A stretch of 61,396 nt of DNA from Saccostrea cucullata. Taxonomy: Eukaryota. Positions 1 to 30,694 of the stretch are shown here, one piece after another. The stretch covers positions 1 through 61,396 of the forward strand of contig NW_026934719.1 in assembly GCF_032062105.1 (NCBI RefSeq), in the 5' to 3' direction. The translations under genes were made by a program, and so were the position numbers. The notes under the pieces are model-generated. The model saw nothing but the letters and a program-made list of their open reading frames with translations. It had not been told where the DNA came from and did no database searches. Position 1 is the first letter of the stretch. Every line of letters begins with the position of its first letter.

Positions 1-1671
1 TTTTTTAAGCATTTGATATCGTCCCTAAATATACACATTACCTACAAACCAAGTATTCAGTGTTGTGTTATTTTTTTAACAGTCTGAAAATTTCTTTTCC
101 CAGTGGATATTGTGCCATATAAGCGGTTATCCATGAAGAATCTTTTTTTTCCTGCAAAATCTGGTATTTAGAGCGCCGGCAGAGTGAATAGGACGAGCAA
201 AAATAATACATATATAAACTGTGAATGATGTCATCACCAGAATGTTTTTGTGGGTGTGCACAATTTTCTAATATTGTTAAAAGATTGGACACTCTAAAAT
301 GCACCTAAAAACTGATTTAAATAATAATATAGAGTGAAATATTTAAGACAATCGAAGATTTGTAGAATTGCATTAGCGTTTTGTAATTCGTAGGTAACAC
401 GGTGGAACACCGACTTTGATAGTTATCGCAAAAGTTGTACAGTAACTGGGTCTCAACATAAGTAATGTCAGTCCTACATATTTAGTTTTTGTTGACGTAT
501 TATACAAAGACCAATATATTGTCATTATTTTGATATTTAATTTTATTTTGTCATTTTCCATACACCAGTCAATGAATTAATCGAATAATTCTCAGAATAT
601 CAATATTACCCTTTTCTCCTAACGCTGTACGTACGTAGAATATTTTTGTACATGACAAACCGCATCTCGGATCAAGACGAATTTTCAGGATATTGTAGTC
701 AAAATGCTAAAGAAACTTTCTGAAAAGTTTGATTGTGATTGGTCCATGTACCTAGGAATTATAGATTTTATCGGCAAGAACTTCAAATTCGTCAGAGGTC
801 AAAATTTCTCCATGAAGAAGAGAGAAACAAAATAAACTTTTTTATCTGGATTTTCTTCACATTTAATGATGGCATTTGATTCCCCCGATATTATTTGATA
901 TTTTATTGTCATGTATTCATTTCTCATAATGTATGTGGAATTGATTTTAATTTTATTTCAAATAGTTTATCATGAAAAAATCATCGATTTTCCTTCGATA
1001 TCTAGTATAATAGCTGTAAAGAAAAAAAAAAAAAAAGCAAACTATGAAATAAAACGAATATCGCTTTCAAAATGATCGAACTCGCAAGTCGCGACCCCCC
1101 CCCCCTTTTTTTTTTCTTTTCCTACTTTTTTTTCTTGCTGCAAGAAAGCGAAAGCAGGCTTTAAGGAGGCAGACATTGTTTGTGACACAAAGTTGTATAG
1201 AGAGGAAAATAGTTTAAGAAGACGGGATTGGTGTATAATAAATATGTTGATATTTTGATAACCGCTTGGTTGAGGCGTTGAACACTTTGAATGAGTTGAA
1301 ATAAATAAAATAAATATATTGAATGCGATTAGAACATACATAAAATGTAGAGCGAGCTTCTTTGGCACATTGCAAAGCCAGGAGTGGATCATAAGTGGTA
1401 TATCTGGAAGGAAGTTCAAAGAAAAGGGGAGAGGGGGCGGGTTCAGATCTGCCTTATAAATATGGAAATTATTTTGCTATAGTATATGTTTCAAAGGGAC
1501 CAAGTTCCTATTATGCTATAGATATAGGTAAGTTAGCGGTATTGCAGTGTACATACGTGTAGCATCATTCATGCAAACATTGGAGGACATATCGCACGGT
1601 ATCTGCAGTCATTTCAAGGTTCGGCATGGAACGTTATGATCTCAAAGAGACACAAAACGTCACAATATGGA

Positions 1672-1750
1672 TGACGTCATAAAAGTGAGATGTCATACTT
1701 TCTCAGTTGTCAAGGAACACTGTAGTGAAGGAAAAGGCAGCAAACATTTG
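1672..1750 (+). promoter_or_regulatory. Putative core promoter and non-coding exon 1 of the array gene (repeated in every unit)
   Basis: CRE palindrome TGACGTCA 1672-1679 overlaps TATA-like CATAAAA 1678-1684. Initiator-like TCAGTT at 1703-1708 (A at 1705) is at a plausible spacing. Donor TTG|GTAAGA at 1750/1751. These motifs are kept in all 8 units. Confidence 0.6.
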
Positions 1751-2008
1751 GTAAGAATTTCCATAGCTTTTATTCTAAGAAATTTGTCCTTAATCCGTAA
1801 AATGAAGTAGAGAACCTGTTTCGTATCTTCCAAATGATAGAAATCGACATGTTCCGCATATTCCATTTATTAATTTTGACTTGACAATAAATAATTAAAA
1901 GGATTAAGAAAAGTGGAAGGGCGGTTGAAATGAAATTGCAAAATAAACATTTTTCTCTATTTTTTTTTGCAATGTGAGATTTTTTTTTTCCTTCTTATTT
2001 TAGAAAAC

Positions 2009-3715
2009 ATGGAGGATAAGTTACAAATACTGAAGTTCGACAAGCCGTGGTATGTTATGGTGGAAGACCATGAAATGTGTCAGGTAATTTCAAATTAAAT
2101 ACTACATGCACGTGTCTCATGCATTCTAACACAAGAACAGTGTTTACAAACTTGGAGACTTTTTTGTCGTTTAATGACGAGTGAGTGAAATAGATCACAA
2201 ATGCCCAGTTCAACGGTCAGTCATATTAGATTAAATCAAATATAAGCGCTCGAATAACTTAGTAGACCTTTCTTAATTTTCACTTGATGGGTTGTAGTTA
2301 ATATTAAGCTGTCCTAAGTTTTCACAAGTATCGTGCAGAATATTCGAAAAGTATAGAGTGGTCTTTTGACCATCACCTAACTGTTTGACGCGATGCTGCA
2401 TGTCCGAAATAAATTGACAGTTTTCACTGTATGTTTACAGCTGTGTGTTTAAGAACAAAGCTTTTTTGTGAAGCAGATAGGTTCTACAGAGTACCAGTTT
2501 AGAATTGTAAATTCAATCAATTGATTAACATTAATTGTCGCATTTTCTTCATTCTAGAGCATTTTTGACGATCTTCTTGAAAAAGTGGATAGAGAGATTG
2601 CTATCAAAAACAAACTGGACGCTCTAATGGCAAGAGCGCAGGTATTCATATGTTACATGCCTTTGTATATTTATAAATTGCATTTTGATTGGAAATATGT
2701 CGATTTGGCAATTTTGTCTTTTCGATTCTGAACTTAAAAAAATTTTATGTGTTTTTAAAAAAATATTTACATTAATTTTAGGAAAGGCAAAGGAGGTATG
2801 AAATTCTCAAGTTTGATAGACCGTGGTGCGAAATGGTGGAGGAACCAGAAATATGCGAGGTAAGCACGGAAAATGAACGTTTTCATCAATGTGCATTTTT
2901 TAAGTTTTAATGCTCTACCAGAAATCTTTAAGCATGCGCTCAGTTGTATAAATACACCCCTTATATAGAATGTCAAACACTTTTAAATCGAAATAAATGT
3001 ATCCAATAAGTACATCAGTGTCGGACAACAATCAATTTACTTGACTTTATTCTAGGATATACTCGATGACTTGACCACGGGAGTGGAGACAGAGGATGAC
3101 ACACGACATTTTAAACACGTGATGGCTACCGTTCTTGATGAGTTAAAGGTAGGTTGTCATCTGAAAATTTGCTTTAAAAACATTGTTATCTTTTTTTTAA
3201 TGGAAGCTACAAAAATCTGCAGAACTGAGAATAATGTAGTTTGTGTTCAACTAAGTGACACAAAGGCAACGAAATGCAAAGATTTCATTTTAAATAAGTT
3301 ATCTTTTTTTCCTCAAAAAATTAATTCCTTCTTTTTAGTCGAAAATACCCGTTCTTCAAGAACAAGAGACGACCTCGTTAAAGAAAGATGCTTCAATGAA
3401 AGACACAAACGCTGATATAAAGAAGACAGATAATACTTCTAGTGTCGTAAGTCTCTCACAATTTTACCCCCCCCCCCCCCCCCCCCCCGCCAATAATGTA
3501 AAGCAAATATTTAGAGATTTTATTTCTTAAACTATAACATTCGAATTAATCTGACTAATTGATTTTATTTATTTCTTTATTTTATTTTCTAACTTTTTTT
3601 CCCTATTTACTTGCAGGTCACTCGTAGAACATTTTTCCAGAACATGAAGAAAAGGCTCCGCAAGATGTTCTTCAGTTGTTGTATGAAGCAAGGAGAAGAC
3701 TGTGATACTTGTTAA
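2009..3715 (+). CDS. Array gene copy 1: 178-aa uncharacterised protein, 6 coding exons (2009-2083, 2558-2641, 2782-2859, 3056-3148, 3339-3446, 3617-3715)
   Basis: All introns are GT..AG and phase 0, with pyrimidine-rich acceptors. The spliced ORF is open: MEDKLQILKFDKPWYVMVEDHEMCQ|SIFDDLLEKVDREIAIKNKLDALMARAQ|ERQRRYEILKFDRPWCEMVEEPEICE|DILDDLTTGVETEDDTRHFKHVMATVLDELK|SKIPVLQEQETTSLKKDASMKDTNADIKKTDNTSSV|VTRRTFFQNMKKRLRKMFFSCCMKQGEDCDTC*. Start context is AAAACATGG. Confidence 0.88.
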
Positions 3716-5759
3716 ATATCTGTTCCTGTCTTTCGAATTTGAACGTTTTGTAATTTTTTTAAGCATTTGATATCGTCCCTAAATATACACATTACCTACA
3801 AACCAAGTATTCAGTGTTGTGTTATTTTTTTAACAGTCTGAAAATTTCTTTTCCCAGTGGATATTGTGCCATATAAGCGGTTATCCATGAAGAATCTTTT
3901 TTTCCTGCAAAATCTGGTATTTAGAGCGCCGGCAGAGTGAATAGGACGAGCAAAAATAATACATATATAAACTGTGAATGATGTCATCACCAGAATGTTT
4001 TTGTGGGTGTGCACAATTTTCTAATATTGTTAAAAGATTGGACACTCTAAAATGCACCTAAAAACTGATTTAAATAATAATATAGAGTGAAATATTTAAG
4101 ACAATCGAAGATTTGTAGAATTGCATTAGCGTTTTGTAATTCGTAGGTAACACGGTGGAACACCGACTTTGATAGTTATCGCAAAAGTTGTACAGTAACT
4201 GGGTCTCAACATAAATAATGTCAGTCCTACATATTTAGTTTTTGTTGACGTATACAAAGACCAATATATTGTCATTATTTTGATATTTAATTTTATTTTG
4301 TCATTTTCCATACACCAGTCAATGAATTAATCGAATAATTCTCAGAATATCAATATTACCCTTTTCTCCTAACGCTGTACGTACGTAGAATATTTTTGTA
4401 CATGACAAACCGCATCTCGGATCAAGACGAATTTTCAGGATATTGTAGTCAAAATGCTAGGGAAACTTTCTGAAAAGTTTGATTGTGATTGGTCCATGTA
4501 CCTAGGAATTATAGATTTTATCGGCAAGAACTTCAAATTCGTCAGAGGTCAAAATTTCTCCATGAAGAAGAGAGAAACAAAATAAACTTTTTTATCTGGA
4601 TTTTCTTCACATTTAATGATGGCATTTGATTCCCCCGATATTATTTGATATTTTATTGTCATGTATTCATTTCTCATAATGTATGTGGAATTGATTTTAA
4701 TTTTATTTCAAATAGTTTATCATGAAAAAATCATCGATTTTCCTTCGATATCTAGTATAATAGCTGTAAAGAAAAAAAAAAAAAAAGCAAACTATGAAAT
4801 AAAACGAATATCGCTTTCAAAATGATCGAACTCGCAAGTCGCGACCCCCCCCCCCCCTTTTTTTTTCTTTTCCTACTTTTTTTTCTTGCTGCAAGAAAGC
4901 GAAAGCAGGCTTTAAGGAGGCAGACATTGTTTGTGACACAAAGTTGTATAGAGAGGAAAATAGTTTAAGAAGACGGGATTGGTGTATAATAAATATGTTG
5001 ATATTTTGATAACCGCTTGGTTGAGGCGTTGAACACTTTGAATGAGTTGAAATAAATAAAATAAATATATTGAATGCGATTAGAACATACATAAAATGTA
5101 GAGCGAGCTTCTTTGGCACATTGCAAAGCCAGGAGTGGATCATAAGTGGTATATCTGGAAGGAAGTTCAAAGAAAAGGGGAGAGGGGGCGGGTTCAGATC
5201 TGCCTTATAAATATGGAAATTATTTTGCTATAGTATATGTTTCAAAGGGACCAAGTTCCTATTATGCTATAGATATAGGTAAGTTAGCGGTATTGCAGTG
5301 TACATACGTGTAGCATCATTCATGCAAACATTGGAGGACATATCGCACGGTATCTGCAGTCATTTCAAGGTTCGGCATGGAACGTTATGATCTCAAAGAG
5401 ACACAAAACGTCACAATATGGATGACGTCATAAAAGTGAGATGTCATACTTTCTCAGTTGTCAAGGAACACTGTAGTGAAGGAAAAGGCAGCAAACATTT
5501 GGTAAGAATTTCCATAGCTTTTATTCTAAGAAATTTGTCCTTAATCCGTAAAATGAAGTAGAGAACCTGTTTCGTATCTTCCAAATGATAGAAATCGACA
5601 TGTTCCGCATATTCCATTTATTAATTTTGACTTGACAATAAATAATTAAAAGGATTAAGAAAAGTGGAAGGGCGGTTGAAATGAAATTGCAAAATAAACT
5701 TTTTTTTTCTTTTTTTTTTGCAATGTGAGATTTTATTTTTTTTTCTTATTTTAGAAAAC

Positions 5760-7460
5760 ATGGAGGATAAGTTACAAATACTGAAGTTCGACAAGCCGTG
5801 GTATGTTATGGTGGAAGACCATGAAATGTGTCAGGTAATTTCAAATTAAATACTACATGCACGTGTCTCATGCATTCTAACACAAGAACAGTGTTTACAA
5901 ACTTGGAGACTTTTTTGTCGTTTAATGACGAGTGAGTGAAATAGATCACAAATGCCCAATTCAACGGTCAGTTATATTAGATTAAATCAAATATAAGCGC
6001 TCGAATAACTTAGTAGACCTTTTTAATTTTCACTTGATGGGTTGTAGTTAATATTAAGCTGTCCTAAGTTTTCACAAGTATCGTGCAGAATATTCGAAAA
6101 GTATAGAGTGGTCTTTTGACCATCACCTAACTGTTTGACGCGATGCTGCATGTCCGAAATAAATTGACAGTTTTCACTGTATGTTTACAGCTGTGTGTTT
6201 AAGAACAAAGCTTTTTTGTGAAGCAGATAGGTTCTACAGAGTACCAGTTTAGAATTGTAAATTCAATCAATTGATTAACATTAATTGTCGCATTTTCTTC
6301 ATTCTAGAGCATTTTTGACGATCTTCTTGAAAAAGTGGATAGAGAGATTGCTATCAAAAACAAACTGGACGCTCTAATGGCAAGAGCGCAGGTATTCATA
6401 TGTTACATGCCTTTGTATATTTATAAATTGCATTTTGATTGGAAATATGTCGATTTGGCAATTTTGTCTTTTCGATTCTGAACTGAAAAAAAAATTTTTA
6501 TGTGTTTTAAAAAATATTTACATTAATTTTAGGAAAGGCAAAGGAGGTATGAAATTCTCAAGTTTGATAGACCGTGGTGCGAAATGGTGGAGGAACCAGA
6601 AATATGCGAGGTAAGCACGGAAAATGAACGTTTTCATCAATGTGCATTTTTTAAGTTTTAATGCTCTACCAGAAATCTTTAAGCATGCGCTCAGTTGTAT
6701 AAATACACCCCTTATATAGAATGTCAAACACTTTTAAATCGAAATAAATGTATCCAATAAGTACATCAGTGTCGGACAACAATCAATTTACTTGACTTTA
6801 TTCTAGGATATACTCGATGACTTGACCACGGGAGTGGAGACAGAGGATGACACACGACATTTTAAACACGTGATGGCTACCGTTCTTGATGAGTTAAAGG
6901 TAGGTTGTCATCTGAAAATTTGCTTTAAAAACATTTATCTTTTTTTTAATGGAAGCTACAAATCTGCAGAACTGAGAATAATGTAGATTGTGTTCAACTA
7001 AGTGACACAAAGGCAACGAAATGCAAAGATTTCATTTTAAATAAGTTATCTTTTTTTCCTCAAAAAATTAATTCCTTCTTTTTAGTCGAAAATACCCGTT
7101 CTTCAAGAACAAGAGACGACCTCGTTAAAGAAAGATGCTTCAATGAAAGACACAAACGCTGATATAAAGAAGACAGATAATACTTCTAGTGTCGTAAGTC
7201 TCTCACAATTTTACCCCCCCCCCCCCCCCCCCCGCCAATAATGTAAAGCAAATATTTAGAGATTTTATTTCTTAAACTATAACATTCGAATTAATCTGAC
7301 TAATTGATTTTATTTATTTCTTTATTTTATTTTCTAACTTTTTTTCCCTATTTACTTGCAGGTCACTCGTAGAACATTTTTCCAGAACATGAAGAAAAGG
7401 CTCCGCAAGATGTTCTTCAGTTGTTGTATGAAGCAAGGAGAAGACTGTGATACTTGTTAA
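5760..7460 (+). CDS. Array gene copy 2 (subtype A, spliced, 178 aa)
   Basis: Same six exons and splice sites as copy 1; ATG 5760, TAA 7458-7460. The indels I noticed lie outside exons. Confidence 0.87.
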
Positions 7461-9509
7461 ATATCTGTTTCTGTCTTTCGAATTTGAACGTTTTGTAATT
7501 TTTTTAAGCATTTGATATCGTCCCTAAATATACACATTACCTACAAACCAAGTATTCAGTGTTGTGTTATTTTTTTAACAGTCTGAAAATTTCTTTTCCC
7601 AGTGGATATTGTGCCATATAAGCGGTTATCCATGAAGAATCTTTTTTTCCTGCAAAATCTGGTATTTAGAGCGCCGGCAGAGTGAATAGGACGAGCAAAA
7701 ATAATACATATATAAACTGTGAATGATGTCATCACCAGAATGTTTTTGTGGGTGTGCACAATTTTCTAATATTGTTAAAAGATTGGACACTCTAAAATGC
7801 ACCTAAAAACTGATTTAAATAATAATATAGAGTGAAATATTTAAGACAATCGAAGATTTGTAGAATTGCATTAGCGTTTTGTAATTCGTAGGTAACACGG
7901 TGGAACACCGACTTTGATAGTTATCGCAAAAGTTGTACAGTAACTGGGTCTCAACATAAATAATGTCAGTCCTACATATTTAGTTTTTGTTGACGTATAC
8001 AAAGACCAATATATTGTCATTATTTTGATATTTAATTTTATTTTGTCATTTTCCATACACCAGTCAATGAATTAATCGAATAATTCTCAGAATATCAATA
8101 TTACCCTTTTCTCCTAACGCTGTACGTACGTAGAATATTTTTGTACATGACAAACCGCATCTCGGATCAAGACGAATTTTCAGGATATTGTAGTCAAAAT
8201 GCTAAAGAAACTTTCTGAAAAGTTTGATTGTGATTGGTCCATGTACCTAGGAATTATAGATTTTATCGGCAAGAACTTCAAATTCGTCAGAGGTCAAAAT
8301 TTCTCCATGAAGAAGAGAGAAACAAAATAAACTTTTTTATCTGGATTTTCTTCACATTTAATGATGGCATTTGATTCCCCCGATATTATTTGATATTTTA
8401 TTGTCATGTATTCATTTCTCATAATGTATGTGGAATTGATTTTAATTTTATTTCAAATAGTTTATCATGAAAAAATCATCGATTTTCCTTCGATATCTAG
8501 TATAATAGCTGTAAAGAAAAAAAAAAAAAAAAAAAGCAAACTATGAAATAAAACGAATATCGCTTTCAAAATGATCGAACTCGCAAGTCGCACCCCCCCC
8601 CCCCTTTTTTTTTTCTTTTCCTACTTTTTTTTCTTGCTGCAAGAAAGCGAAAGCAGGCTTTAAGGAGGCAGACATTGTTTGTGACACAAAGTTGTATAGA
8701 GAGGAAAATAGTTTAAGAAGACGGGATTGGTGTATAATAAATATGTTGATATTTTGATAACCGCTTGGTTGAGGCGTTGAACACTTTGAATGAGTTGAAA
8801 TAAATAAAATAAATATATTGAATGCGATTAGAACATACATAAAATGTAGAGCGAGCTTCTTTGGCACATTGCAAAGCCAGGAGTGGATCATAAGTGGTAT
8901 ATCTGGAAGGAAGTACAAAGAAAAGGGGAGAGGGGGCGGGTTCAGATCTGCCTTATAAATATGGAAATTATTTTGCTATAGTATATGTTTCAAAGGGACC
9001 AAGTTCCTATTATGCTATAGATATAGGTAAGTTAGCGGTATTGCAGTGTACATACGTGTAGCATCATTCATGCAAACATTGGAGGACATATCGCACGGTA
9101 TCTGCAGTCATTTCAAGGTTCGGCATGGAACGTTATGATCTCAAAGAGACACAAAACGTCACAATATGGATGACGTCATAAAAGTGAGATGTCATACTTT
9201 CTCAGTTGTCAAGGAACACTGTAGTGAAGGAAAAGGCAGCAAACATTTGGTAAGAATTTCCATAGCTTTTATTCTAAGAAATTTGTCCTTAATCCGTAAA
9301 ATGAAGTAGAGAACCTGTTTCGTATCTTCCAAATGATAGAAATCGACATGTTCCGCATATTCCATTTATTAATTTTGACTTGACAATAAATAATTAAAAG
9401 GATTAAGAAAAGTGGAAGGGCGGTTGAAATGAAATTGCAAAATAAACATTTTTTTCTTTTTTTTTTGCAATGTGAGCTTTTATTTTTTTTTTTTCTTATT
9501 TTAGAAAAC

Positions 9510-11213
9510 ATGGAGGATAAGTTACAAATACTGAAGTTCGACAAGCCGTGGTATGTTATGGTGGAAGACCATGAAATGTGTCAGGTAATTTCAAATTAAA
9601 TACTACATGCACGTGTCTCATGCATTCTAACACAAGAACAGTGTTTACAAACTTGGAGACTTTTTTGTCGTTTAATGACGAGTGAGTGAAATAGATCACA
9701 AATGCCCAGTTCAACGGTCAGTCATATTAGATTAAATCAAATATAAGCGCTCGAATAACTTAGTAGACCTTTCTTAATTTTCACTTGATGGGTTGTAGTT
9801 AATATTAAGCTGTCCTAAGTTTTCACAAGTATCGTGCAGAATATTCGAAAAGTATAGAGTGGTCTTTTGACCATCACCTAACTGTTTGACGCGATGCTGC
9901 ATGTCCGAAATAAATTGACAGTTTTCACTGTATGTTTACAGCTGTGTGTTTAAGAACAAAGCTTTTTTGTGAAGCAGATAGGTTCTACAGAGTACCAGTT
10001 TAGAATTGTAAATTCAATCAATTGATTAACATTAATTGTCGCATTTTCTTCATTCTAGAGCATTTTTGACGATCTTCTTGAAAAAGTGGATAGAGAGATT
10101 GCTATCAAAAACAAACTGGACGCTCTAATGGCAAGAGCGCAGGTATTCATATGTTACATGCCTTTGTATATTTATAAATTGCATTTTGATTGGAAATATG
10201 TCGATTTGGCAATTTTGTCTTTTCGATTCTGAACTGAAAAAAAAACTTTTATGTGTTTTAAAAAATATTTACATTAATTTTAGGAAAGGCAAAGGAGGTA
10301 TGAAATTCTCAAGTTTGATAGACCGTGGTGCGAAATGGTGGAGGAACCAGAAATATGCGAGGTAAGCACGGAAAATGAACGTTTTCATCAATGTGCATTT
10401 TTTAAGTTTTAATGCTCTACCAGAAATCTTTAAGCATGCGCTCAGTTGTATAAATACACCCCTTATATAGAATGTCAAACACTTTTAAATCGAAATAAAT
10501 GTATCCAATAAGTACATCAGTGTCGGACAACAATCAATTTACTTGACTTTATTCTAGGATATACTCGATGACTTGACCACGGGAGTGGAGACAGAGGATG
10601 ACACACGACATTTTAAACACGTGATGGCTACCGTTCTTGATGAGTTAAAGGTAGGTTGTCATCTGAAAATTTGCTTTAAAAACATTGTTATCTTTTTTTT
10701 AATGGAAGCTACAAAAATCTGCAGAATTGAGAATAATGTAGTTTGTGTTCAACTAAGTGACACAAAGGCAACGAAATGCAAAGATTTCATTTTAAATAAG
10801 TTATCTTTTTTTCCTCAAAAAATTAATTCCTTCTTTTTAGTCGAAAATACCCGTTCTTCAAGAACAAGAGACGACCTCGTTAAAGAAAGATGCTTCAATG
10901 AAAGACACAAACGCTGATATAAAGAAGACAGATAATACTTCTAGTGTCGTAAGTCTCTCACAATTTTACCCCCCCCCCCCCCCCCCGCCAATAATGTAAA
11001 GCAAATATTTAGAGATTTTATTTCTTAAACTATAACATTCGAATTAATCTGACTAATTGATTTTATTTATTTCTTTATTTTATTTTCTAACTTTTTTTCC
11101 CTATTTTCTTGCAGGTCACTCGTAGAACATTTTTCCAGAACATGAAGAAAAGGCTCCGCAAGATGTTCTTCAGTTGTTGTATGAAGCAAGGAGAAGACTG
11201 TGATACTTGTTAA
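9510..11213 (+). CDS. Array gene copy 3 (subtype A, spliced, 178 aa)
   Basis: Same exon set; ATG 9510, TAA 11211-11213. Confidence 0.87.
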
Positions 11214-13255: not shown

Positions 13256-14953
13256 ATGGAGGATAAGTTACAAATACTGAAGTTCGACAAGCCGTGGTAT
13301 GTTATGGTGGAAGACCATGAAATGTGTCAGGTAATTTCAAATTAAATACTACATGCACGTGTCTCATGCATTCTAACACAAGAACAGTGTTTACAAACTT
13401 GGAGACTTTTTTGTCGTTTAATGACGAGTGAGTGAAATAGATCACAAATGCCCAGTTCAACGGTCAGTCATATTAGATTAAATCAAATATAAGCGCTCGA
13501 ATAACTTAGTAGACCTTTCTTAATTTTCACTTGATGGGTTGTAGTTAATATTAAGCTGTCCTAAGTTTTCACAAGTATCGTGCAGAATATTCGAAAAGTA
13601 TAGAGTGGTCTTTTGACCATCACCTAACTGTTTGACGCGATGCTGCATGTCCGAAATAAATTGACAGTTTTCACTGTATGTTTACAGCTGTGTGTTTAAG
13701 AACAAAGCTTTTTTGTGAAGCAGATAGGTTCTACAGAGTACCAGTTTAGAATTGTAAATTCAATCAATTGATTAACATTAATTGTCGCATTTTCTTCATT
13801 CTAGAGCATTTTTGACGATCTTCTTGAAAAAGTGGATAGAGAGATTGCTATCAAAAACAAACTGGACGCTCTAATGGCAAGAGCGCAGGTATTCATATGT
13901 TACATGCCTTTGTATATTTATAAATTGCATTTTGATTGGAAATATGTCGATTTGGCAATTTTGTCTTTTCGATTCTGAACTGAAAAAAAAAATTTTATGT
14001 GTTTTAAAAAATATTTACATTAATTTTAGGAAAGGCAAAGGAGGTATGAAATTCTCAAGTTTGATAGACCGTGGTGCGAAATGGTGGAGGAACCAGAAAT
14101 ATGCGAGGTAAGCACGGAAAATGAACGTTTTCATCAATGTGCATTTTTTAAGTTTTAATGCTCTACCAGAAATCTTTAAGCATGCGCTCAGTTGTATAAA
14201 TACACCCCTTATATAGAATGTCAAACACTTTTAAATCGAAATAAATGTATCCAATAAGTACATCAGTGTCGGACAACAATCAATTTACTTGACTTTATTC
14301 TAGGATATACTCGATGACTTGACCACGGGAGTGGAGACAGAGGATGACACACGACATTTTAAACACGTGATGGCTACCGTTCTTGATGAGTTAAAGGTAG
14401 GTTGTCATCTGAAAATTTGCTTTAAAAACATTTTCTTTTTTTTAATGTAAGCTACAAAAATCTGCAGTACTGAGAATAATGTAGTTTGTGTTCAATTAAG
14501 TGACACAAAGGCAACGAAATGCAAAGATTTCATTTTAAATAAGTTATCTTTTTTTCCTCAAAAAATTAATTCCTTCTTTTTAGTCGAAAATACCCGTTCT
14601 TCAAGAACAAGAGACGACCTCGTTAAAGAAAGATGCTTCAATGAAAGACACAAACGCTGATATAAAGAAGACAGATAATACTTCTAGTGTCGTAAGTCTC
14701 TCACAATTTTACCCCCCCCCCCCCCCGCCAATAATGTAAAGCAAATATTTAGAGATTTTATTTCTTAAACTATAACATTCGAATTAATCTGACTAATTGA
14801 TTTTATTTATTTCTTTATTTTATTTTCTAACTTTTTTTCCCTATTTTCTTGCAGGTCACTCGTAGAACATTTTTCCAGAACATGAAGAAAAGGCTCCGCA
14901 AGATGTTCTTCAGTTGTTGTATGAAGCAAGGAGAAGACTGTGATACTTGTTAA
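13256..14953 (+). CDS. Array gene copy 4 (subtype A, spliced, 178 aa)
   Basis: Same exon set; ATG 13256, TAA 14951-14953. A 10-nt duplication (tacttgttaa) follows the stop. Confidence 0.87.
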
Positions 14954-20764: not shown

Positions 20765-22481
20765 ATGGAGGATAAGTTACAAATACTGAAGTTCGACAAG
20801 CCGTGGTATGTTATGGTGGAGGACCATGAGATGTGTCAGGTAATTTCAAACTAAATACTACATGCACGAGTCTCATGCATTCTAACACAAAAACAGTGTT
20901 TACAAACTTGGAGACTTTTTTGTCGTTTAATGACGAGTTAGTGAAATAGATCACAAATGCCCAATTCAACGGTCAGTCATATAAGATTTAATCAAATATA
21001 AGCGCTCGAATAACTTAGTAGACCTTTTTAATTTTCACTTCATGGGTTGTAGTTAATATTAAGCTGTCCTAAGTTTTCACAAGTATCGTGCGGAATTCGA
21101 AAAGTAGAGAGTGATCTTTCGACCATCACCTAAATGTTTGACGCGATGCTACATGTCCGAAATAAATTGACAGTTTTCATTGTATGTTTACAGTGTGTTT
21201 AAGAACAAAGTTTTTTGTGTGAAGCAGATAGGTTCTACAGAGTACCAGTTTAGAATTGTAAATTCAATCAATTGATTAACATTAATTGTCGTATTTTCTT
21301 CATTCTAGAGCATTTTTGACGATCTTCTTGAAAAAGTGGATAGAGAGATTGCTATCAAAAACAAACTGGACGCTCTAATGGCAAGAGCACAGGTATGCAT
21401 ATATTACATGCCTTTGTATATTTATAAATTGCACCTTGATTGGAAATATGTCCATTTGGGAATTTTGTCTTTTCAATTCTGAACTGAAAAAAATGGCAAA
21501 TTTTATGTGTTTTTAAAAATTATTTATATTAATTTTAGGAAAGGCAAAGGAGGTATGAAATTCTCAAGTTTGATAGACCGTGGTGCGAAATGGTGGAGGA
21601 ACCAGAAATATGCGAGGTAAGCACGGAAAATGAACGTTTACATCAATGTGCATTTTTTTTTTTAAGTTTTAATGCTCTACCAGAAATCTTTAAGCACGCG
21701 CTCAGTTGTATAAATACACCCTTTATATAGAATGTCAAACACTTTTAAATCGAAATAAATGTATCCAATAAGTACATCGGTGTCGGACAGCAATCAATTT
21801 TCTTGAGTTTATTCTAGGATATACTCGATGACTTGACCACGGGAGTGGAGACAGAGGACGACACACAACATTTTAAACACGTGATGGCTACCGTTCTTGA
21901 TGAGTTAAAGGTAGGTTGTCATATCTGAAAATTTGCTTTAAAAACATTGTGATTTTTTTTTTAATGGAAGCTACAAAATTGAGAATTGAGAATAATGTAG
22001 TTTGTGTTCAATTAAGTGACACAAAGGCAACGAAATGCAAAGATTTCATTTTAAACAAGTTATCTTTTTTTTTCTCAAAAAATCAATTCCTTCCTTTTAG
22101 TCGAAAATACCCGTTCTTCAAGAACAAGAGACGACCTTGTTAAAGAAAGATGCTTCAATGAAAGACACAAACGCTGATATAAAGAAGACAGATAATACTT
22201 TAAGTGTCGTAAGTCTCTCACAATTTTAACCCCCCCCCCCCCCCCCCGCCAATAATGTGAAGCAAATACAATGTATTTAGAGATTTTCTTTCTTATACTA
22301 TAACATTCGAATTAATCTGACTGATTGATTTTATTTATTTCTTTATTTTATTTCTAACTTTTTTTTCCCTATTTACTTGCAGGTCACTCGTAGAACATTT
22401 TTCCAGAACATGAAGAAAAGGCTCCGCAAGATGTTCTTCAGTTGTTGTATGAAGCAAGGAGAAGACTGTGATACTTGTTAA
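20765..22481 (+). CDS. Array gene copy 6 (subtype B, spliced, 178 aa)
   Basis: ATG 20765, TAA 22479-22481, splice sites intact. Versus subtype A: synonymous GAA>GAG (twice), GCG>GCA and GAT>GAC; replacements R>Q, S>L and S>L. Confidence 0.87.
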
Positions 22482-24492
22482 ATATCTGTTCCTGTCTTTC
22501 GTATTTGAACGATTTGTAATTTTTTTAAGCATTTGACATTGTCCCTAAATATACACATTACCTACAAACCAAGTATTCAGTGTTGTGTTATTTTTTTAAC
22601 AGTCTGAAAATTTCTTTTCCCAGTGGATATTGTGCCATATAAGCGGTTATCCATGAAGAATCTTTTTTCCCCTAAAATCTCGCATTTGGAGCGCCGGCAG
22701 AGTGAACAGGGGGAGCAAAAATAATACATTTATAACCTGGAATGACGTCATCACCAGAATGTTTTTGTGGGTGTGCACAATTTTCTAATATTGTTAAAAG
22801 ATTGGACACCCTAAAATGCACCTTAAAACTGATTTTAAAAATAATATAGAGTGAAATATTTAAGTCAAGCGAAGATTTGTAGCATTGTATTAGCGTTTTT
22901 TAATTCGTAGATAACACGGTGGAACACCGACTTTGATAATTATCGCTAAAGTTGTACAGTAACTGGGTCTCAACATAAATAACGTCAGTCCTACATATAT
23001 AGTTTTTGTTGACGTATACAAAGACCAATATATTGTCATTGTTTTGATATTTAATTTTATTTTGTCATTTTCCATACACCAGTCAATGAATTAATCGTAT
23101 GATTCTCAGAATATCAATATTACCCTTTTCTCCTAACTCTGTACGTACGTAGAATATTTCTGTACATGACAAACCGCATCTGGGATCAAGACGAATTTTC
23201 AGGATATTGTAGTCAAAATGTTAAAGAAACTTTCTGGAAAGTTTGATTGTGATTGGTCCATGTACCTAGGAATTATAGATTTTATCGGCAAGAACTTCAA
23301 ATTCGTCAGAGGTCAAAATTTCTGCATGAAAAAGAGAGAAACAAAATAAACCTTTTTATCTGGATTTTCTTCACATTTCATTGATGGCATTTGATTCCCC
23401 CGATATTATTTGATATTTTATTGTCATGTATTCATTTCTCATAATGTATGTGGAATTGATTTTAATTTTATTTCAAATAGTGTATCATGAAAAAATTATC
23501 GATTTCCACTTGATAACTAGTATAATAGCTGTGAAAAAAAAAACAAAAAAAAAAAAACTATGAAATAAAAGGATTATCGCTTTCAAAATAATCGAACTCG
23601 CAAGTCGCAACCTTTTTTTCCCTACTTTTTTTCTTGCTGCAAGAAAGCGAAAGTAGGGTTTAAGGAGGCAGACATTGCTTGTGGCAGAAAGTTGTACAGA
23701 GAGGAAAATAGTTTAAGAAGACGGGATTGGTGTATAATAAATGTGTTGATATTTTGATAACCGCTTGGTTGAGGCGTTGAACACTTTGAATGAGTTGAAA
23801 TAAATAAAATAAATATATTGAATGCGATTAGAACATACATAAAATGTAGAGCGAGCTTCTTTGGCACATTGCAAAGCCGGGGGTGGATCATAAGTGGTAT
23901 ATCTGGAAGGAAGGTCAAAGAAAAGGGGAGAGGGGGCGGGTTCAGATCTGCCTTATAGATATGGAAATTACTTTGCTATAGTATATGTTTCAAAGGGACC
24001 AAGTTCAAAGATATATGTAAGTTAGCGGTATTGCAGTGTACATACATGTAGCATCATTTATGCAAACATTAGAGGACATATTGCACGGTATCTGCAGTCA
24101 TTTCAGGGTTCGGCATGGAACGTTATGATCTCAAAGAGACACAAAACGTCACAATATCGATGACGTCATAAAAGTGATGATGTACTTTCTCAGTTGTCAA
24201 GAAACACTGTAGTGAAGGAAAAGGTAGCAAACATTTGGTAAGAATTTCCATAGCTTTTATTCTAAGAAATTTGTCCTTATTCTGTAAAATGAAGTAGAGA
24301 ACCTGTTTCATATCTTCCAAATAATAGAAATCGACATGTTCCGTATATTCATTTATTCATTTTGACTTGACAATAAATAATTAAAAGGATGAAGAGAAGT
24401 GGGAGGGCGGTTGAAATGAAATTGCAAAATAAACTTTTTTTTTCTCTTTTCTGTAATGTGAGATTTTATTTTTTCTTCTTATTTTAGAAAAC

Positions 24493-26206
24493 ATGGAGGA
24501 TAAGTTACAAATACTGAAGTTCGACAAGCCGTGGTATGTTATGGTGGAGGACCATGAGATGTGTCAGGTAATTTCAAACTAAATACTACATGCACGAGTC
24601 TCATGCATTCTAACACAAAAACAGTGTTTACAAACTTGGAGACTTTTTTGTCGTTTAATGACGAGTTAGTGAAATAGATCACAAATGCCCAATTCAACGG
24701 TCAGTCATATAAGATTTAATCAAATATAAGCGCTCGAATAACTTAGTAGACCTTTTTAATTTTCACTTCATGGGTTGTAGTTAATATTAAGCTGTCCTAA
24801 GTTTTCACAAGTATCGTGCGGAATTCGAAAAGTAGAGAGTGATCTTTCGACCATCACCTAAATGTTTGACGCGATGCTACATGTCCGAAATAAATTGACA
24901 GTTTTCATTGTATGTTTACAGTGTGTTTAAGAACAAAGTTTTTTGTGTGAAGCAGATAGGTTCTACAGAGTACCAGTTTAGAATTGTAAATTCAATCAAT
25001 TGATTAACATTAATTGTCGTATTTTCTTCATTCTAGAGCATTTTTGACGATCTTCTTGAAAAAGTGGATAGAGAGATTGCTATCAAAAACAAACTGGACG
25101 CTCTAATGGCAAGAGCACAGGTATGCATATATTACATGCCTTTGTATATTTATAAATTGCACCTTGATTGGAAATTGTCCATTTGGGAATTTTGTCTTTT
25201 CAATTCTGAACTGAAAAAAATGGCAAATTTTATGTGTTTTTAAAAATTATTTATATTAATTTTAGGAAAGGCAAAGGAGGTATGAAATTCTCAAGTTTGA
25301 TAGACCGTGGTGCGAAATGGTGGAGGAACCAGAAATATGCGAGGTAAGCACGGAAAATGAACGTTTACATCAATGTGCATTTTTTTTTTTAAGTTTTAAT
25401 GCTCTACCAGAAATCTTTAAGCACGCGCTCAGTTGTATAAATACACCCTTTATATAGAATGTCAAACACTTTTAAATCGAAATAAATGTATCCAATAAGT
25501 ACATCGGTGTCGGACAGCAATCAATTTTCTTGAGTTTATTCTAGGATATACTCGATGACTTGACCACGGGAGTGGAGACAGAGGACGACACACAACATTT
25601 TAAACACGTGATGGCTACCGTTCTTGATGAGTTAAAGGTAGGTTGTCATATCTGAAAATTTGCTTTAAAAACATTGTGATTTTTTTTTTAATGGAAGCTA
25701 CAAAATTGAGAATTGAGAATAATGTAGTTTGTGTTCAATTAAGTGACACAAAGGCAACGAAATGCAAAGATTTCATTTTAAACAAGTTATCTTTTTTTTT
25801 CTCAAAAAATCAATTCCTTCCTTTTAGTCGAAAATACCCGTTCTTCAAGAACAAGAGACGACCTTGTTAAAGAAAGATGCTTCAATGAAAGACACAAACG
25901 CTGATATAAAGAAGACAGATAATACTTTAAGTGTCGTAAGTCTCTCACAATTTTAACACCCCCCCCCCCCCCGCCAATAATGTGAAGCAAATACAATGTA
26001 TTTAGAGATTTTCTTTCTTATACTATAACATTCGAATTAATCTGACTGATTGATTTTATTTATTTCTTTATTTTATTTCTAACTTTTTTTTCCCTATTTA
26101 CTTGCAGGTCACTCGTAGAACATTTTTCCAGAACATGAAGAAAAGGCTCCGCAAGATGTTCTTCAGTTGTTGTATGAAGCAAGGAGAAGACTGTGATACT
26201 TGTTAA
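24493..26206 (+). CDS. Array gene copy 7 (subtype B)
   Basis: ATG 24493, TAA 26204-26206; exons match copy 6. Confidence 0.87.
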
Positions 26207-28226
26207 ATATCTGTTCCTGTCTTTCGTATTTGAACGATTTGTAATTTTTTTAAGCATTTGACATTGTCCCTAAATATACACATTACCTACAAACCAAGTA
26301 TTCAGTGTTGTGTTATTTTTTTAACAGTCTGAAAATTTCTTTTCCCAGTGGATATTGTGCCATATAAGCGGTTATCCATGAAGAATCTTTTTTCCCCTAA
26401 AATCTCGCATTTGGAGCGCCGGCAGAGTGAACAGGGGGAGCAAAAATAATACATTTATAACCTGGAATGACGTCATCACCAGAATGTTTTTGTGGGTGTG
26501 CACAATTTTCTAATATTGTTAAAAGATTGGACACCCTAAAATGCACCTTAAAACTGATTTTAAAAATAATATAGAGTGAAATATTTAAGTCAAGCGAAGA
26601 TTTGTAGCATTGTATTAGCGTTTTTTAATTCGTAGATAACACGGTGGAACACCGACTTTGATAATTATCGCTAAAGTTGTACAGTAACTGGGTCTCAACA
26701 TAAATAACGTCAGTCCTACATATATAGTTTTTGTTGACGTATACAAAGACCAATATATTGTCATTGTTTTGATATTTAATTTTATTTTGTCATTTTCCAT
26801 ACACCAGTCAATGAATTAATCGTATGATTCTCAGAATATCAATATTACCCTTTTCTCCTAACTCTGTACGTACGTAGAATATTTCTGTACATGACAAACC
26901 GCATCTGGGATCAAGACGAATTTTCAGGATATTGTAGTCAAAATGTTAAAGAAACTTTCTGGAAAGTTTGATTGTGATTGGTCCATGTACCTAGGAATTA
27001 TAGATTTTATCGGCAAGAACTTCAAATTCGTCAGAGGTCAAAATTTCTGCATGAAAAAGAGAGAAACAAAATAAACCTTTTTATCTGGATTTTCTTCACA
27101 TTTCATTGATGGCATTTGATTCCCCCGATATTATTTGATATTTTATTGTCATGTATTCATTTCTCATAATGTATGTGGAATTGATTTTAATTTTATTTCA
27201 AATAGTGTATCATGAAAAAATTATCGATTTCCACTTGATAACTAGTATAATAGCTGTGAAAAAAAAAAAAAAAAAAAAAAAACTATGAAATAAAAGGATT
27301 ATCGCTTTCAAAATAATCGAACTCGCAAGTCGCGACCTTCTTTTTTTTTTTCCCTACTTTTTTTCTTGCTGCAAGAAAGCGAAAGTAGGGTTTAAGGAGG
27401 CAGACATTGCTTGTGGCAGAAAGTTGTACAGAGAGGAAAATAGTTTAAGAAGACGGGATTGGTGTATAATAAATGTGTTGATATTTTGATAACCGCTTGG
27501 TTGAGGCGTTGAACACTTTGAATGAGTTGAAATAAATAAAATAAATATATTGAATGCGATTAGAACATACATAAAATGTAGAGCGAGCTTCTTTGGCACA
27601 TTGCAAAGCCGGGGGTGGATCATAAGTGGTATATCTGGAAGGAAGGTCAAAGAAAAGGGGAGAGGGGGCGGGTTCAGATCTGCCTTATAGATATGGAAAT
27701 TACTTTGCTATAGTATATGTTTCAAAGGGACCAAGTTCAAAGATATATGTAAGTTAGCGGTATTGCAGTGTACATACATGTAGCATCATTTATGCAAACA
27801 TTAGAGGACATATTGCACGGTATCTGCAGTCATTTCAGGGTTCGGCATGGAACGTTATGATCTCAAAGAGACACAAAACGTCACAATATCGATGACGTCA
27901 TAAAAGTGAGATGTCATACTTTCTCAGTTGTCAAGAAACACTGTAGTGAAGGAAAAGGTAGCAAACATTTGGTAAGAATTTCCATAGCTTTTATTCTAAG
28001 AAATTTGTCCTTATTCTGTAAAATGAAGTAGAGAACCTGTTTCATATCTTCCAAATAATAGAAATCGACATGTTCCGTATATTCATTTATTCATTTTGAC
28101 TTGACAATAAATAATTAAAAGGATGAAGAGAAGTGGGAGGGCGGTTGAAATGAAATTGCAAAATAAACTTTTTTTTTCTCTTTTCTGTAATGTGAGATTT
28201 TATTTTTTCTTCTTATTTTAGAAAAC

Positions 28227-29934
28227 ATGGAGGATAAGTTACAAATACTGAAGTTCGACAAGCCGTGGTATGTTATGGTGGAGGACCATGAGATGTGTCA
28301 GGTAATTTCAAACTAAATACTACATGCACGAGTCTCATGCATTCTAACACAAAAACAGTGTTTACAAACTTGGAGACTTTTTTGTCGTTTAATGACGAGT
28401 TAGTGAAATAGATCACAAATGCCCAATTCAACGGTCAGTCATATAAGATTTAATCAAATATAAGCGCTCGAATAACTTAGTAGACCTTTTTAATTTTCAC
28501 TTCATGGGTTGTAGTTAATATTAAGCTGTCCTAAGTTTTCACAAGTATCGTGCGGAATTCGAAAAGTAGAGAGTGATCTTTCGACCATCACCTAAATGTT
28601 TGACGCGATGCTACATGTCCGAAATAAATTGACAGTTTTCATTGTATGTTTACAGTGTGTTTAAGAACAAAGTTTTTTGTGTGAAGCAGATAGGTTCTAC
28701 AGAGTACCAGTTTAGAATTGTAAATTCAATCAATTGATTAACATTAATTGTCGTATTTTCTTCATTCTAGAGCATTTTTGACGATCTTCTTGAAAAAGTG
28801 GATAGAGAGATTGCTATCAAAAACAAACTGGACGCTCTAATGGCAAGAGCACAGGTATGCATATATTACATGCCTTTGTATATTTATAAATTGCACCTTG
28901 ATTGGAAATATGTCCATTTGGGAATTTTGTCTTTTCAATTCTGAACTGAAAAAAATGGCAAATTTTATGTGTTTTTAAAAATTATTTATATTAATTTTAG
29001 GAAAGGCAAAGGAGGTATGAAATTCTCAAGTTTGATAGACCGTGGTGCGAAATGGTGGAGGAACCAGAAATATGCGAGGTAAGCACGGAAAATGAACGTT
29101 TACATCAATGTGCATTTTTTTTTTAAAGTTTTAATGCTCTACCAGAAATCTTTAAGCACGCGCTCAGTTGTATAAATACACCCTTTATATAGAATGTCAA
29201 ACACTTTTAAATCGAAATAAATGTATCCAATAAGTACATCGGTGTCGGACAGCAATCAATTTTCTTGAGTTTATTCTAGGATATACTCGATGACTTGACC
29301 ACGGGAGTGGAGACAGAGGACGACACACAACATTTTAAACACGTGATGGCTACCGTTCTTGATGAGTTAAAGGTAGGTTGTCATATCTGAAAATTTGCTT
29401 TAAAAACATTGTGATTTTTTTTTAATGGAAGCTACAAAATTGAGAATTGAGAATAATGTAGTTTGTGTTCAATTAAGTGACACAAAGGCAACGAAATGCA
29501 AAGATTTCATTTTAAACAAGTTATCTTTTTTTTTCTCAAAAAATCAATTCCTTCCTTTTAGTCGAAAATACCCGTTCTTCAAGAACAAGAGACGACCTTG
29601 TTAAAGAAAGATGCTTCAATGAAAGACACAAACGCTGATATAAAGAAGACAGATAATACTTTAAGTGTCGTAAGTCTCTCACAATTTTAACCCCACCACC
29701 CCCTCCCGCCAATAATGTGAAGCAAATATTTAGATATTTTATTTCTTAAACTATAACATTGGAATTAATCTGACTAATTGATTTTATTTATTTCTTTATT
29801 TTATTTCTAACTTTTTTTTCCCTATTTACTTGCAGGTCACTCGTAGAACATTTTTCCAGAACATGAAGAAAAGGCTCCGCAAGATGTTCTTCAGTTGTTG
29901 TATGAAGCAAGGAGAAGACTGTGATACTTGTTAA
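28227..29934 (+). CDS. Array gene copy 8 (subtype B, terminal copy)
   Basis: ATG 28227, TAA 29932-29934; exons match copy 6. About 600 nt of 3' flank remain before the array ends. Confidence 0.87.
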
Positions 29935-30694
29935 ATATCTGTTCCTGTCTTTCGTATTTGAACGATTTGTAATTTTTTTAAGCATTTGACATTGTCCCTA
30001 AATATACACATTACCTACAAACCAAGTATTCAGTGTTGTGTTATTTTTTTAACAGTCTGAAAATTTCTTTTCCCAGTGGATATTGTGCCATATAAGCGGT
30101 TATCCATGAAGAATCTTTTTTTCCTGCAAAATCTCGTATTTGGAGCGCCGGCAGAGTGAACAGGGAGCAAAAATAATACATATATAACCTGGAATGACGT
30201 CATCACCAGAATGTTTTTGTGGGTGTGCACAATTTTCTAATATTGTTAAAAGATTGGACACCCTAAAATGCACCTTAAAACTGATTTTAAAAATAATATA
30301 GAGTGAAATATTTAAGTCAAGCGAAGATTTGTAGCATTGTATTAGCGTTTTTTAATTCGTAGATAACACGGTGGAACACCGACTTTGATAATTATCGCTA
30401 AAGTTGTACAGTAACTGGGTCTCAACATAAATAATGTCAGTCCTACATATATAGTTTTTGTTGACGTATACAAAGACCAATATATTGTCATTGTTTTGAT
30501 ATTTAATTTTATTTTGTCATTTTCCATACACCAGTCTGAAACTTATTTTAACCTCCGATTTCAGTAGTCAAACGTCCGGTACTTCTCTTTGACGCTTTTT
30601 GGCTTTCAAAGTCTCTTAATATTTTATAATATTCAGATTTCTTCAGAAAACACACAATATCAATTTTAATAAAAAACAAAAATACAAAAGAAAA

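What the first reader, a model, noticed from the sequence alone, without database searches (positions are those of the whole stretch)
1..30536. Macrosatellite in which every unit is an intact multi-exon gene of unknown family (at least 8 copies)
Seen: near-identical 3.75-kb units each splice to a 178-aa ORF. Outside copy 5, the indels I noticed fall in introns or spacers, and 4 of 7 codon differences between subtypes are synonymous, which fits coding constraint. Established: gene-bearing macrosatellites such as D4Z4/DUX4 and TSPY are copy-number variable and often germline-associated. Inference: a recently amplified, dosage-selected lineage-specific gene. Repeat masking would hide it.
Basis: partly seen in the sequence, partly recalled or inferred. 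Interest (0 to 1): 0.8.

Follow-up and report, generated by a model that had tools for sequence, protein, structure and literature searches.

The report
Tandem array of an oyster orphan gene
A 30-kb stretch of the hooded oyster genome is a head-to-tail array of 3.75-kb units, each holding a small, spliced, transcribed gene under purifying selection that has no detectable relative outside this species; NCBI already lists it as "uncharacterized" and partly mis-models it.

Summary
Window 1-30536 holds 8 full units plus one partial unit, with a period of 3725-3781 bp. Each unit carries a 6-coding-exon, all-phase-0, GT-AG gene. It encodes 178 aa in seven copies. Copy 5 has a duplicated exon-6 acceptor and gives 177 aa from the second acceptor.

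The organism is Saccostrea cucullata. My spliced models equal RefSeq XP_062579267/8 (subtype B) and XP_062596502 (subtype A), both "uncharacterized protein".

RNA reads from two studies confirm every coding intron and a 5'UTR exon. No read is 99% or more identical to an assembled copy, so the transcripts come from other subtypes or individuals.

Several results point to coding constraint:
- Exons diverge 1.5% against about 4.5% for non-coding DNA.
- omega is about 0.18 between subtypes.
- Exons 1-3 show 7 synonymous and 0 non-synonymous changes.
- Young variants among 12 A-type units avoid exons (0 of 73).

No relative exists outside this species' own models, no Pfam family matches, and there is no paralogue outside the array.

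Across the assembly the array is split over at least 7 contigs, about 21 units in all. At least 13 are intact and at least 7 are broken, three of them by a mobile element in exon 2.

It is a new member of a known kind, the gene-bearing macrosatellite. Dosage selection, copy-number variation and function remain untested. The scan had already noted the protein's module duplication on this same window.

The parts
1..30536 (+). Head-to-tail array of 8 full units and one partial unit, period about 3.75 kb. The contig starts inside the array. The right edge lies at 30536, which is unit position 605.
1583..3715 (+). Gene copy 1, subtype A, from the 5'UTR exon to the stop codon. CDS 2009-3715, 178 aa, intact.
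5334..7460 (+). Gene copy 2, subtype A and the reference model. 5'UTR exon 5334-5500. Coding exons 5760-5834 (this exon begins at 5755), 6308-6391, 6533-6610, 6807-6899, 7086-7193 and 7362-7460. The 3'UTR runs on to about 7541-7560.
9082..11213 (+). Gene copy 3, subtype A, CDS 9510-11213, intact.
12833..14953 (+). Gene copy 4, subtype A, CDS 13256-14953, intact.
16579..18741 (+). Gene copy 5, subtype A, CDS 17003-18741. A 31-nt partial duplication sits at the exon-6 acceptor, about 18612-18650. The first acceptor breaks the frame. The second acceptor gives an in-frame 177-aa protein in which Thr-Arg is replaced by Ser.
20342..22481 (+). Gene copy 6, subtype B, CDS 20765-22481, intact. Its product equals P0001.
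24072..26206 (+). Gene copy 7, subtype B, CDS 24493-26206, intact. It is one of the two RefSeq 178-aa genes, LOC134241214 and LOC134241215; the other is copy 8.
27804..29934 (+). Gene copy 8, subtype B, CDS 28227-29934, intact. It is one of the two RefSeq 178-aa genes, LOC134241214 and LOC134241215; the other is copy 7.
29935..30536 (+). Partial ninth unit, made of 3'UTR and spacer only (unit positions 1-605, 95.7% identity). This is the right edge of the array.
4302..5174 (.). Spacer segment (unit positions 587-1459) that also occurs alone on other contigs at about 84-85% identity. Its core, unit 715-993 (window about 4430-4708), matches more than 15 contigs at 67-70%. It is probably an old dispersed repeat caught in the spacer.

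Best explanation
Shown:
- This is a tandemly amplified, protein-coding orphan gene of the hooded oyster Saccostrea cucullata.
- Each 3.75-kb unit is a complete transcription unit. It has a 5'UTR exon, six coding exons with phase-0 GT-AG introns, and a 3'UTR of about 80-100 nt.
- The gene is transcribed and spliced into a single-unit mRNA of about 0.86 kb.
- The reading frame is under purifying selection. Selection is strongest on the N-terminal pair of duplicated two-exon modules, each carrying an LKFD(K/R)PWxxMVE motif.

Inferred about the array:
- It grew and is kept homogeneous by unequal crossing-over or gene conversion.
- Blocks of subtypes support this (A in copies 1-5, B in copies 6-8).
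- So do the more diverged, degenerate units at the array edges.
- So does a transposon-interrupted unit that is itself present on three contigs.

Inferred with low confidence about the protein:
- It has no signal peptide or transmembrane segment, so it is probably intracellular.
- It has an acidic helical body (residues 1-146, pI 4.7) and a basic C-terminal helix ending in four cysteines (..KKRLRKMFFSCCMKQGEDCDTC).
- That layout suits peripheral membrane attachment by S-acylation plus basic residues.
- The two conserved N-terminal motifs would then serve as binding sites for partners.
- Many copies would raise the amount of one product.
For: - Array and gene model.
- The model is identical to RefSeq proteins of S. 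cucullata encoded on this very contig and on C2929.
- Splicing: all five coding introns and the 5'UTR intron (5500>5755) are seen as GT..AG joints in raw oligo-dT RNA reads of three samples. An 859-nt contig from another study joins 5'UTR-E1-E2-E3-E4-E5-E6-3'UTR.
- Constraint, exons against non-coding DNA: 8 differences in 537 exon bases against 144 in 3170 non-coding bases between subtypes, Fisher p=3.7e-4.
- Constraint, subtype A against B: dN/dS about 0.18, with dS about 4.5%, the same as intron divergence.
- Constraint, pooled: 12 synonymous and 10 non-synonymous changes, p=1.7e-4.
- Constraint, by region: exons 1-3 have 7 synonymous and 0 non-synonymous changes, p=4e-6. Exons 4-5 have 4 and 10, which is near neutral.
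- Constraint, young variants: among 12 A-type units, 0 of 73 substitution columns fall in exons, p=1.7e-5, once the copy-5 duplication is set aside.
- The expressed haplotypes carry no frameshift.
- Orphan status: (only S. cucullata models), and no paralogue outside the array contigs.
- Internal module duplication: 51% identity over 35 aa.
- Protein features. Helical prediction.
Against: - No RNA read was 99% or more identical to the reference unit. The expressed variants are absent from every assembled copy, so it is not shown that the window's own copies are the transcribed ones.
- Expression in the three raw-read runs is very low, 5-14 reads per 11-13 million reads.
- The 172-nt 5'UTR holds five upstream ATGs.
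- At least 7 units elsewhere in the assembly are broken. Several of these lie on short contigs that may be error-rich.
- There is no protein-level evidence.
- The fold model has low confidence (pLDDT 49).
- The membrane-anchor idea rests on composition only.
- Non-coding variant counts may be inflated by assembly errors in low-complexity DNA.
Confidence: 0.75

Rival explanations
1. The amplification is neutral, satellite-like. One or a few copies, possibly unassembled ones, are the working gene. The assembled array copies are silent passengers on their way to decay, so copy number is not selected.
For: - All laid RNA reads are 95-99% alike and none reaches 99%.
- The expressed variants match no assembled copy.
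- At least 7 broken units exist, including a transposon-interrupted unit present on three contigs.
- Expression is low in three samples.
Against: - Young substitutions among 12 near-identical A-type units avoid exons entirely, 0 of 73, p=1.7e-5. This is unexpected if the copies were free to decay.
- 13 units keep the identical-length open frame.
- The RNA runs probably come from other individuals of a highly polymorphic species, which explains the mismatch by itself.
Confidence: 0.2
2. The units are exons of one long gene, as in RefSeq's 340-, 394- and 448-aa models named 'myosin heavy chain, non-muscle-like'. Read-through transcripts would splice exon 3 of one unit to exon 2 of the next.
For: - RefSeq models P0007, P0009 and P0010 have exactly the form E1 + n x (E2+E3) + E4-E6.
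- All introns are phase 0, so such joins stay in frame.
Against: - The only full-length transcript seen is a single-unit mRNA (X5 contig).
- E3>E4 joints occur in all three raw-read runs, and no backward E3>E2 joint was listed.
- Pfam finds no myosin motor or myosin tail in P0009.
- Read depth was too low to exclude rare chained forms.
Confidence: 0.08
3. The transcript is non-coding, and the 178-codon frame is open by chance or by recent origin.
For: - There is no homologue and no domain.
- The fold model is of low confidence.
- The 5'UTR holds five upstream ATGs.
Against: - Synonymous changes are in significant excess, and exons 1-3 show 7 synonymous against 0 non-synonymous.
- Exons diverge about three times less than introns.
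- The frame stays open in four diverged subtypes.
Confidence: 0.05
4. The unit is an internal part of a transposon, or the array is an assembly artefact of a single-copy gene.
For: - A spacer segment is a dispersed repeat.
- The array breaks the assembly into many small contigs.
Against: - The gene part occurs only on the array contigs and at their edges.
- The unit has no transposon protein domain and no RNA gene.
- Copies carry their own substitutions, indels, subtypes and a private duplication, which a collapsed or duplicated artefact would not produce.
Confidence: 0.03

Closest known systems
Gene-bearing macrosatellites of mammals (TSPY, D4Z4/DUX4, CT47, GAGE arrays). This comparison rests on my own knowledge of those loci and was not tested here.
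   Same: Kilobase-scale units lie head to tail. Units are nearly identical, introns and spacers included. Each unit holds one complete small gene. Subtypes occur in blocks and edge copies are degenerate, as expected from unequal exchange. As with GAGE and CT47, the product is a small acidic protein with no known domain.
   Different: There is no sequence relationship, the animal is a bivalve, the gene has six coding exons, and neither copy-number variation between individuals nor germline expression was tested. This is an analogy of organisation, not family membership.
RefSeq models of S. cucullata: LOC134241214/LOC134241215 (XP_062579267/8), LOC134257939 (XP_062596502), and the chained 'myosin heavy chain, non-muscle-like' models
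   Same: The 178-aa models are letter for letter my spliced subtype B and subtype A products.
   Different: RefSeq gives no function. It chains copies 1-6 of this window into one 448-aa model under a misleading name. The RNA seen here supports single-unit mRNAs instead.
Tandem lineage-specific gene expansions of bivalves, for example the oyster MIEAP-domain array noted earlier in this scan
   Same: Co-oriented tandem copies of one gene in an oyster genome, evolving under purifying selection.
   Different: Those arrays are old, their members are diverged, and they belong to known domain families. Here the units are 95-100% identical over the whole 3.75 kb, and the protein has no family.

Membership tests
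Gene-bearing macrosatellite | Head-to-tail repeat with a unit of about 1 kb or more and high identity between units | tested here: met
   Period 3725-3781 bp, 8 full units plus one partial. Units differ by 0.3-0.9% within a subtype and about 5% between subtypes.
Gene-bearing macrosatellite | Each unit holds a complete gene or open reading frame | tested here: met
   In the window, 7 of 8 units have the 178-aa frame and copy 5 has a 177-aa frame through a second acceptor. Genome-wide, at least 7 further units are broken.
Gene-bearing macrosatellite | The unit's gene is transcribed | tested here: met
   Spliced reads in three raw RNA runs and an 859-nt contig from a second study. These come from subtypes other than the assembled ones.
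Gene-bearing macrosatellite | Copy number varies between individuals | not tested
The array is split over at least 7 contigs, so even the reference copy number is unknown.
Non-muscle myosin heavy chain (RefSeq name of the chained models) | Myosin motor domain and myosin tail | tested here: not met
   The Pfam scan of P0009 lists no myosin motor or tail family. It gives mostly weak matches to unrelated families; DUF4476 and DUF6005 score above their cut-offs on this repeat-chained model.
Internal part of a transposable element | Copies dispersed over the genome and transposon protein domains | tested here: not met
   The gene part is found only on array contigs and edge fragments. Spacer ORFs have no Pfam family at or above threshold.
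Known tandem RNA gene units (5S, snRNA, tRNA) | A match to an RNA family inside the unit | tested here: not met
   Rfam found nothing at E up to 0.1 and ARAGORN found no tRNA.
Secreted cationic-peptide precursor (weak Pfam hint 'Latarcin precursor', E=0.16) | N-terminal signal peptide ahead of an acidic propiece and a cationic peptide | tested here: not met
   The N-terminus MEDKLQ.. is polar. The highest 19-residue hydropathy mean is 0.53, so there is no signal or transmembrane segment. A stop codon lies in frame just upstream of the ATG.

The most novel reading that the evidence does not exclude
The array could work as a length-variable gene. All introns are phase 0, and the ends of exon 1 and exon 3 are homologous. 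Read-through transcripts could therefore splice exon 3 of one unit to exon 2 of the next. That would yield proteins with n repeats of the conserved LKFDxPW-helix module, with n limited by array copy number. RefSeq's 340-, 394- and 448-aa models have exactly this form. Macrosatellite copy number would then set protein architecture, not only dosage.
Probability: 0.07. Interest if true: 0.7.

Novelty: new member of a known kind. Interest (0 to 1): 0.4.

Why it matters
The locus is a clean invertebrate example of a macrosatellite whose unit is a working, multi-exon, species-restricted gene. Selection is visible even on variants that arose after the amplification. That makes it a usable case for asking three things: how young genes gain copy number, whether dosage or mere unequal exchange drives such arrays, and how annotation pipelines mis-chain them. 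Here a 178-aa gene became a 448-aa 'myosin heavy chain-like' model. On its own it does not overturn anything. Tandem arrays of lineage-specific genes are common in bivalves, and the genes are already in RefSeq.

Tried and rejected
- TRF cannot see a 3.75-kb period, so I used the repeat finder instead.
- My first guess for the 5'UTR was a TATA-like site near 5205 with a donor at 5278. The RNA refuted it: the real 5'UTR exon is 5334-5500.
- The exon-by-exon Pfam scan found nothing.
- I did not type the joined spliced protein into any search tool. The exhaustive search with exon 6 by reference returned the full-length RefSeq protein P0001. A script showed it to be identical to my joined model, and I used it by id afterwards.
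- These searches found no relative or family for the full-length protein: Pfam, PDB sequences, the ESM Atlas, and two word-index searches covering candidates of 98-690 aa.
- The AlphaFold single-sequence model has pLDDT 49. I ran no fold search because matches to such a model are meaningless.
- Exon 6 gave two weak hits, P0002 and P0003. They are repeat proteins from marine metatranscriptome and metagenome data that share an LRKxxxxCCxxxGEDC motif. I did not take this as homology.
- Literature searches for the locus names and for oyster macrosatellites found no paper on this locus.
- I found no full-length source copy for the expressed haplotypes in the assembly.
- Rfam, tRNA and spacer-ORF scans were negative.
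Full report
**1. What is there**

The window is the whole 61,396-base contig C16856 of a 1.17-Gb assembly with 23,869 contigs. From base 1 to 30536 it is a head-to-tail array. The repeat finder gives 8-9 in-register copies spaced 3725-3781 bp apart. The ninth unit is partial: 29935-30536 equals unit positions 1-605 at 95.7% identity. TRF missed the array only because its longest period is 500. The contig begins inside the array, so 8 is a lower bound.

**2. The gene model**

In copy 2 the + strand carries six coding exons: 5760-5834, 6308-6391, 6533-6610, 6807-6899, 7086-7193 and 7362-7460.
- All introns have GT-AG borders and are phase 0.
- The exons sum to 537 nt, which is 178 codons plus a stop.
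- Projected onto every unit, copies 1-4 encode one protein (subtype A). Copies 6-8 encode a second (subtype B) that differs by R96Q, S123L and S144L.
- Copy 5 has a 31-nt partial duplication of the exon-6 acceptor region. The first acceptor breaks the frame. The second gives an in-frame 177-aa product.
Exons have no gap columns outside copy 5, and 7 codons differ between the subtypes, 4 of them synonymously.

**3. Identity of the organism and the gene**

- Exon 6 was given by reference to the exhaustive search of 1.84 billion representatives. It returned a 178-aa protein, P0001, matching at residues 147-178.
- P0001 is RefSeq XP_062579267/XP_062579268, 'uncharacterized protein LOC134241215/LOC134241214 [Saccostrea cucullata]', encoded on a 61,396-base contig.
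- A script showed that P0001 equals my subtype-B model. P0006 (XP_062596502, on contig C2929) equals subtype A.
- So the genes are already annotated, without a function.
- RefSeq also holds chained models of 340, 394 and 448 aa, the last on this window. They have the form E1 + n x (E2+E3) + E4-E6 and are named 'myosin heavy chain, non-muscle-like'.
- Pfam finds no myosin domain in them.

**4. Transcription and splicing**

Three raw-read oligo-dT RNA-seq runs of the same species label, and one older run from another study, were laid on window 3716-7900.
- All five coding introns appear as GT..AG joints.
- A 5'UTR exon, 5334-5500, is spliced to 5755.
- An 859-nt contig in run X5 (word depth 29.6) joins 5'UTR-E1-E2-E3-E4-E5-E6 and ends at 7541.
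- Spacer positions 3716-4975 have no coverage on either strand; upstream of the 5'UTR exon only run X5's contig piece at 5107-5181 gives coverage.
- Depth in the raw runs is very low: 10, 5 and 14 reads.
- Every laid read is 95-99% alike and none reaches 99%.
- The variant bases are absent from all assembled copies, apart from three shared with subtype B and a few shared with old edge fragments.
- The transcripts therefore come from at least two further subtypes, most simply from other individuals of a polymorphic species.
- These subtypes carry substitutions only in the coding sequence, with no frameshift.
- Transcription of the window's own copies is therefore not shown.

**5. Coding constraint**

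- Between subtypes, exons differ at 8 of 537 bases (1.5%). Introns differ by about 4.8% and spacers by 4.2-5.3%. Fisher p=3.7e-4.
- dS is about 4.5%, the same as intron divergence. dN is about 0.8%, so omega is about 0.18.
- Pooling subtype and RNA variants gives 12 synonymous and 10 non-synonymous changes. About 81% non-synonymous would be expected by chance (p=1.7e-4).
- By region, exons 1-3 have 7 synonymous and 0 non-synonymous changes (p=4e-6). Exons 4-5 have 4 and 10, which is near neutral.
- Among 12 near-identical A-type units from three contigs, 73 substitution columns lie outside exons and none inside, once the copy-5 duplication is set aside (p=1.7e-5).
- That last result suggests selection acts on many copies. 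Assembly errors in low-complexity non-coding DNA could inflate the contrast.

**6. The protein**

- Residues 4-38 and 57-91 are 51% identical. Exons 1-2 and 3-4 are therefore a duplicated two-exon module, each with an LKFD(K/R)PWxxMVE motif followed by a helix.
- The body (residues 1-146) is acidic, pI 4.7. The last exon is basic, pI 9.5, and ends in four cysteines.
- No hydrophobic segment could serve as a signal peptide or membrane span. An in-frame stop precedes the ATG.
- AlphaFold without an alignment predicts helices at low confidence, pLDDT 49. I ran no fold search on it.
- No relative or family was found by Pfam, PDB sequences, the ESM Atlas or two word-index searches covering 98-690 aa. 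Those searches found only S. cucullata models.
- A six-frame search of the oyster's own genome finds the exons only on the array contigs and edge fragments.
- My functional reading is inference from composition alone: an intracellular protein held at membranes by a basic, S-acylated tail, with two conserved binding motifs.

**7. The array in the whole assembly**

Further units lie on these contigs:
- C5128: 20.7 kb, entirely array, 5 intact genes plus a partial one.
- C2929: left flank plus 3 units.
- C13241, C15662, C15309, C13724 and C3947.

Together with the window this comes to about 21 units. Thirteen genes have the intact 178-aa frame, and copy 5 may add one more.

At least seven units are broken:
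- a 10-nt insertion in exon 3 (C2929, unit 2);
- a truncation inside exon 6 (C2929, unit 3);
- frameshifts (C13241 and the first, partial unit of C5128);
- three units split in exon 2 by a 2.2-2.3-kb element with inverted ends.

That element occurs at 88-95% identity on dozens of contigs, so it is a mobile element. Some of the short contigs look error-rich, so part of this damage may be artefact.

The left edge on C2929 matches C3947 at 98-99%. A more diverged edge ends contig C12887.

Three features fit growth and homogenisation by unequal exchange (inference): subtypes lie in blocks, edge copies are degenerate, and an interrupted unit has been propagated.

**8. Rivals**

- A transposon origin is excluded.
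- A known tandem RNA-gene unit is excluded.
- A pure assembly artefact is excluded by the private differences of each copy.
- A non-coding transcript is unlikely, given section 5.
- The chained long gene of RefSeq is not supported. E3>E4 joints occur in all three raw runs, the only full-length transcript is single-unit, and no backward joint was listed. Depth was too low to exclude rare chained forms.
- The live rival is that amplification is neutral and most assembled copies are silent.

**9. Verdict**

Recent amplification, constraint, transcription and lineage restriction hold. Dosage selection, germline association and copy-number variation are untested.

This is a new member of a known kind, a gene-bearing macrosatellite or tandemly amplified orphan gene. 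It is already present in RefSeq as uncharacterized, and no paper found here mentions it.

Noticed in passing
L015:1409-3644 (contig C15309), and likewise C15662:479-2817 and C13724:563-2895: A 2.2-2.3-kb element with short inverted ends (CAAGGGCGGATCCAG...CTGGATCCGCCTATG) splits exon 2 of three array units at the same site. The same element occurs at 88-95% identity on dozens of other contigs, so it is a fairly young non-autonomous mobile element. The interrupted unit itself seems to have been amplified, or assembled three times.
   Followed up: partly
window 1-22481 (RefSeq model P0010): RefSeq chains exon 1 of copy 1, exons 2-3 of copies 1-6 and exons 4-6 of copy 6 into one 448-aa protein named 'myosin heavy chain, non-muscle-like'. 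This is probably an annotation artefact, made possible by phase-0 introns and the homologous ends of exons 1 and 3.
   Followed up: partly
window 30541-31180 against 40827-41504 and 60899-61370: The DNA just right of the array is 72-73% similar to two other stretches of the window. A local paralogous family therefore abuts the array edge.
   Followed up: no
window 5334-5500 (5'UTR exon of copy 2): The 5'UTR holds five upstream ATGs and a perfect TGACGTCA palindrome at 5423-5430. The X5 transcript contig also carries 5107-5181 joined to 5334 across a 152-nt skip with non-canonical GA..TG ends. That is more likely an indel difference between haplotypes than an intron.
   Followed up: no
P0002 and P0003 (marine metatranscriptome and metagenome proteins): These proteins are built of 6-7 repeats of a motif, ..LRKSHxxCCEADGEDCP.., that resembles the C-terminal LRKMFFSCCMKQGEDC of the oyster protein (9 of 16 identical per repeat). 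It could be a shared Cys-rich short motif or chance.
   Followed up: partly
window 4430-4708 (unit positions 715-993), repeated in every unit: This spacer core matches more than 15 unrelated contigs at 67-70%. The larger segment, unit 587-1459, occurs alone on C22536 and C7966 at about 84-85%. It looks like an old dispersed repeat embedded in the spacer.
   Followed up: no
window 46730-46912 and 59884-60207: Two small tandem repeats lie outside the array: a 91-nt unit x 2.0 and a 137-nt unit x 2.4.
   Followed up: no
G000:C13126:174260-174676 with 200407-202888, and G000:C11177:10967-12382 with 34083-34661: Two other contigs each hold an 84-87% copy of exons 5-6 and, 22-26 kb further on, a copy of unit positions 4-592. 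In the array these two pieces are adjacent. They may be old duplicates of an array end split by later insertions.
   Followed up: no
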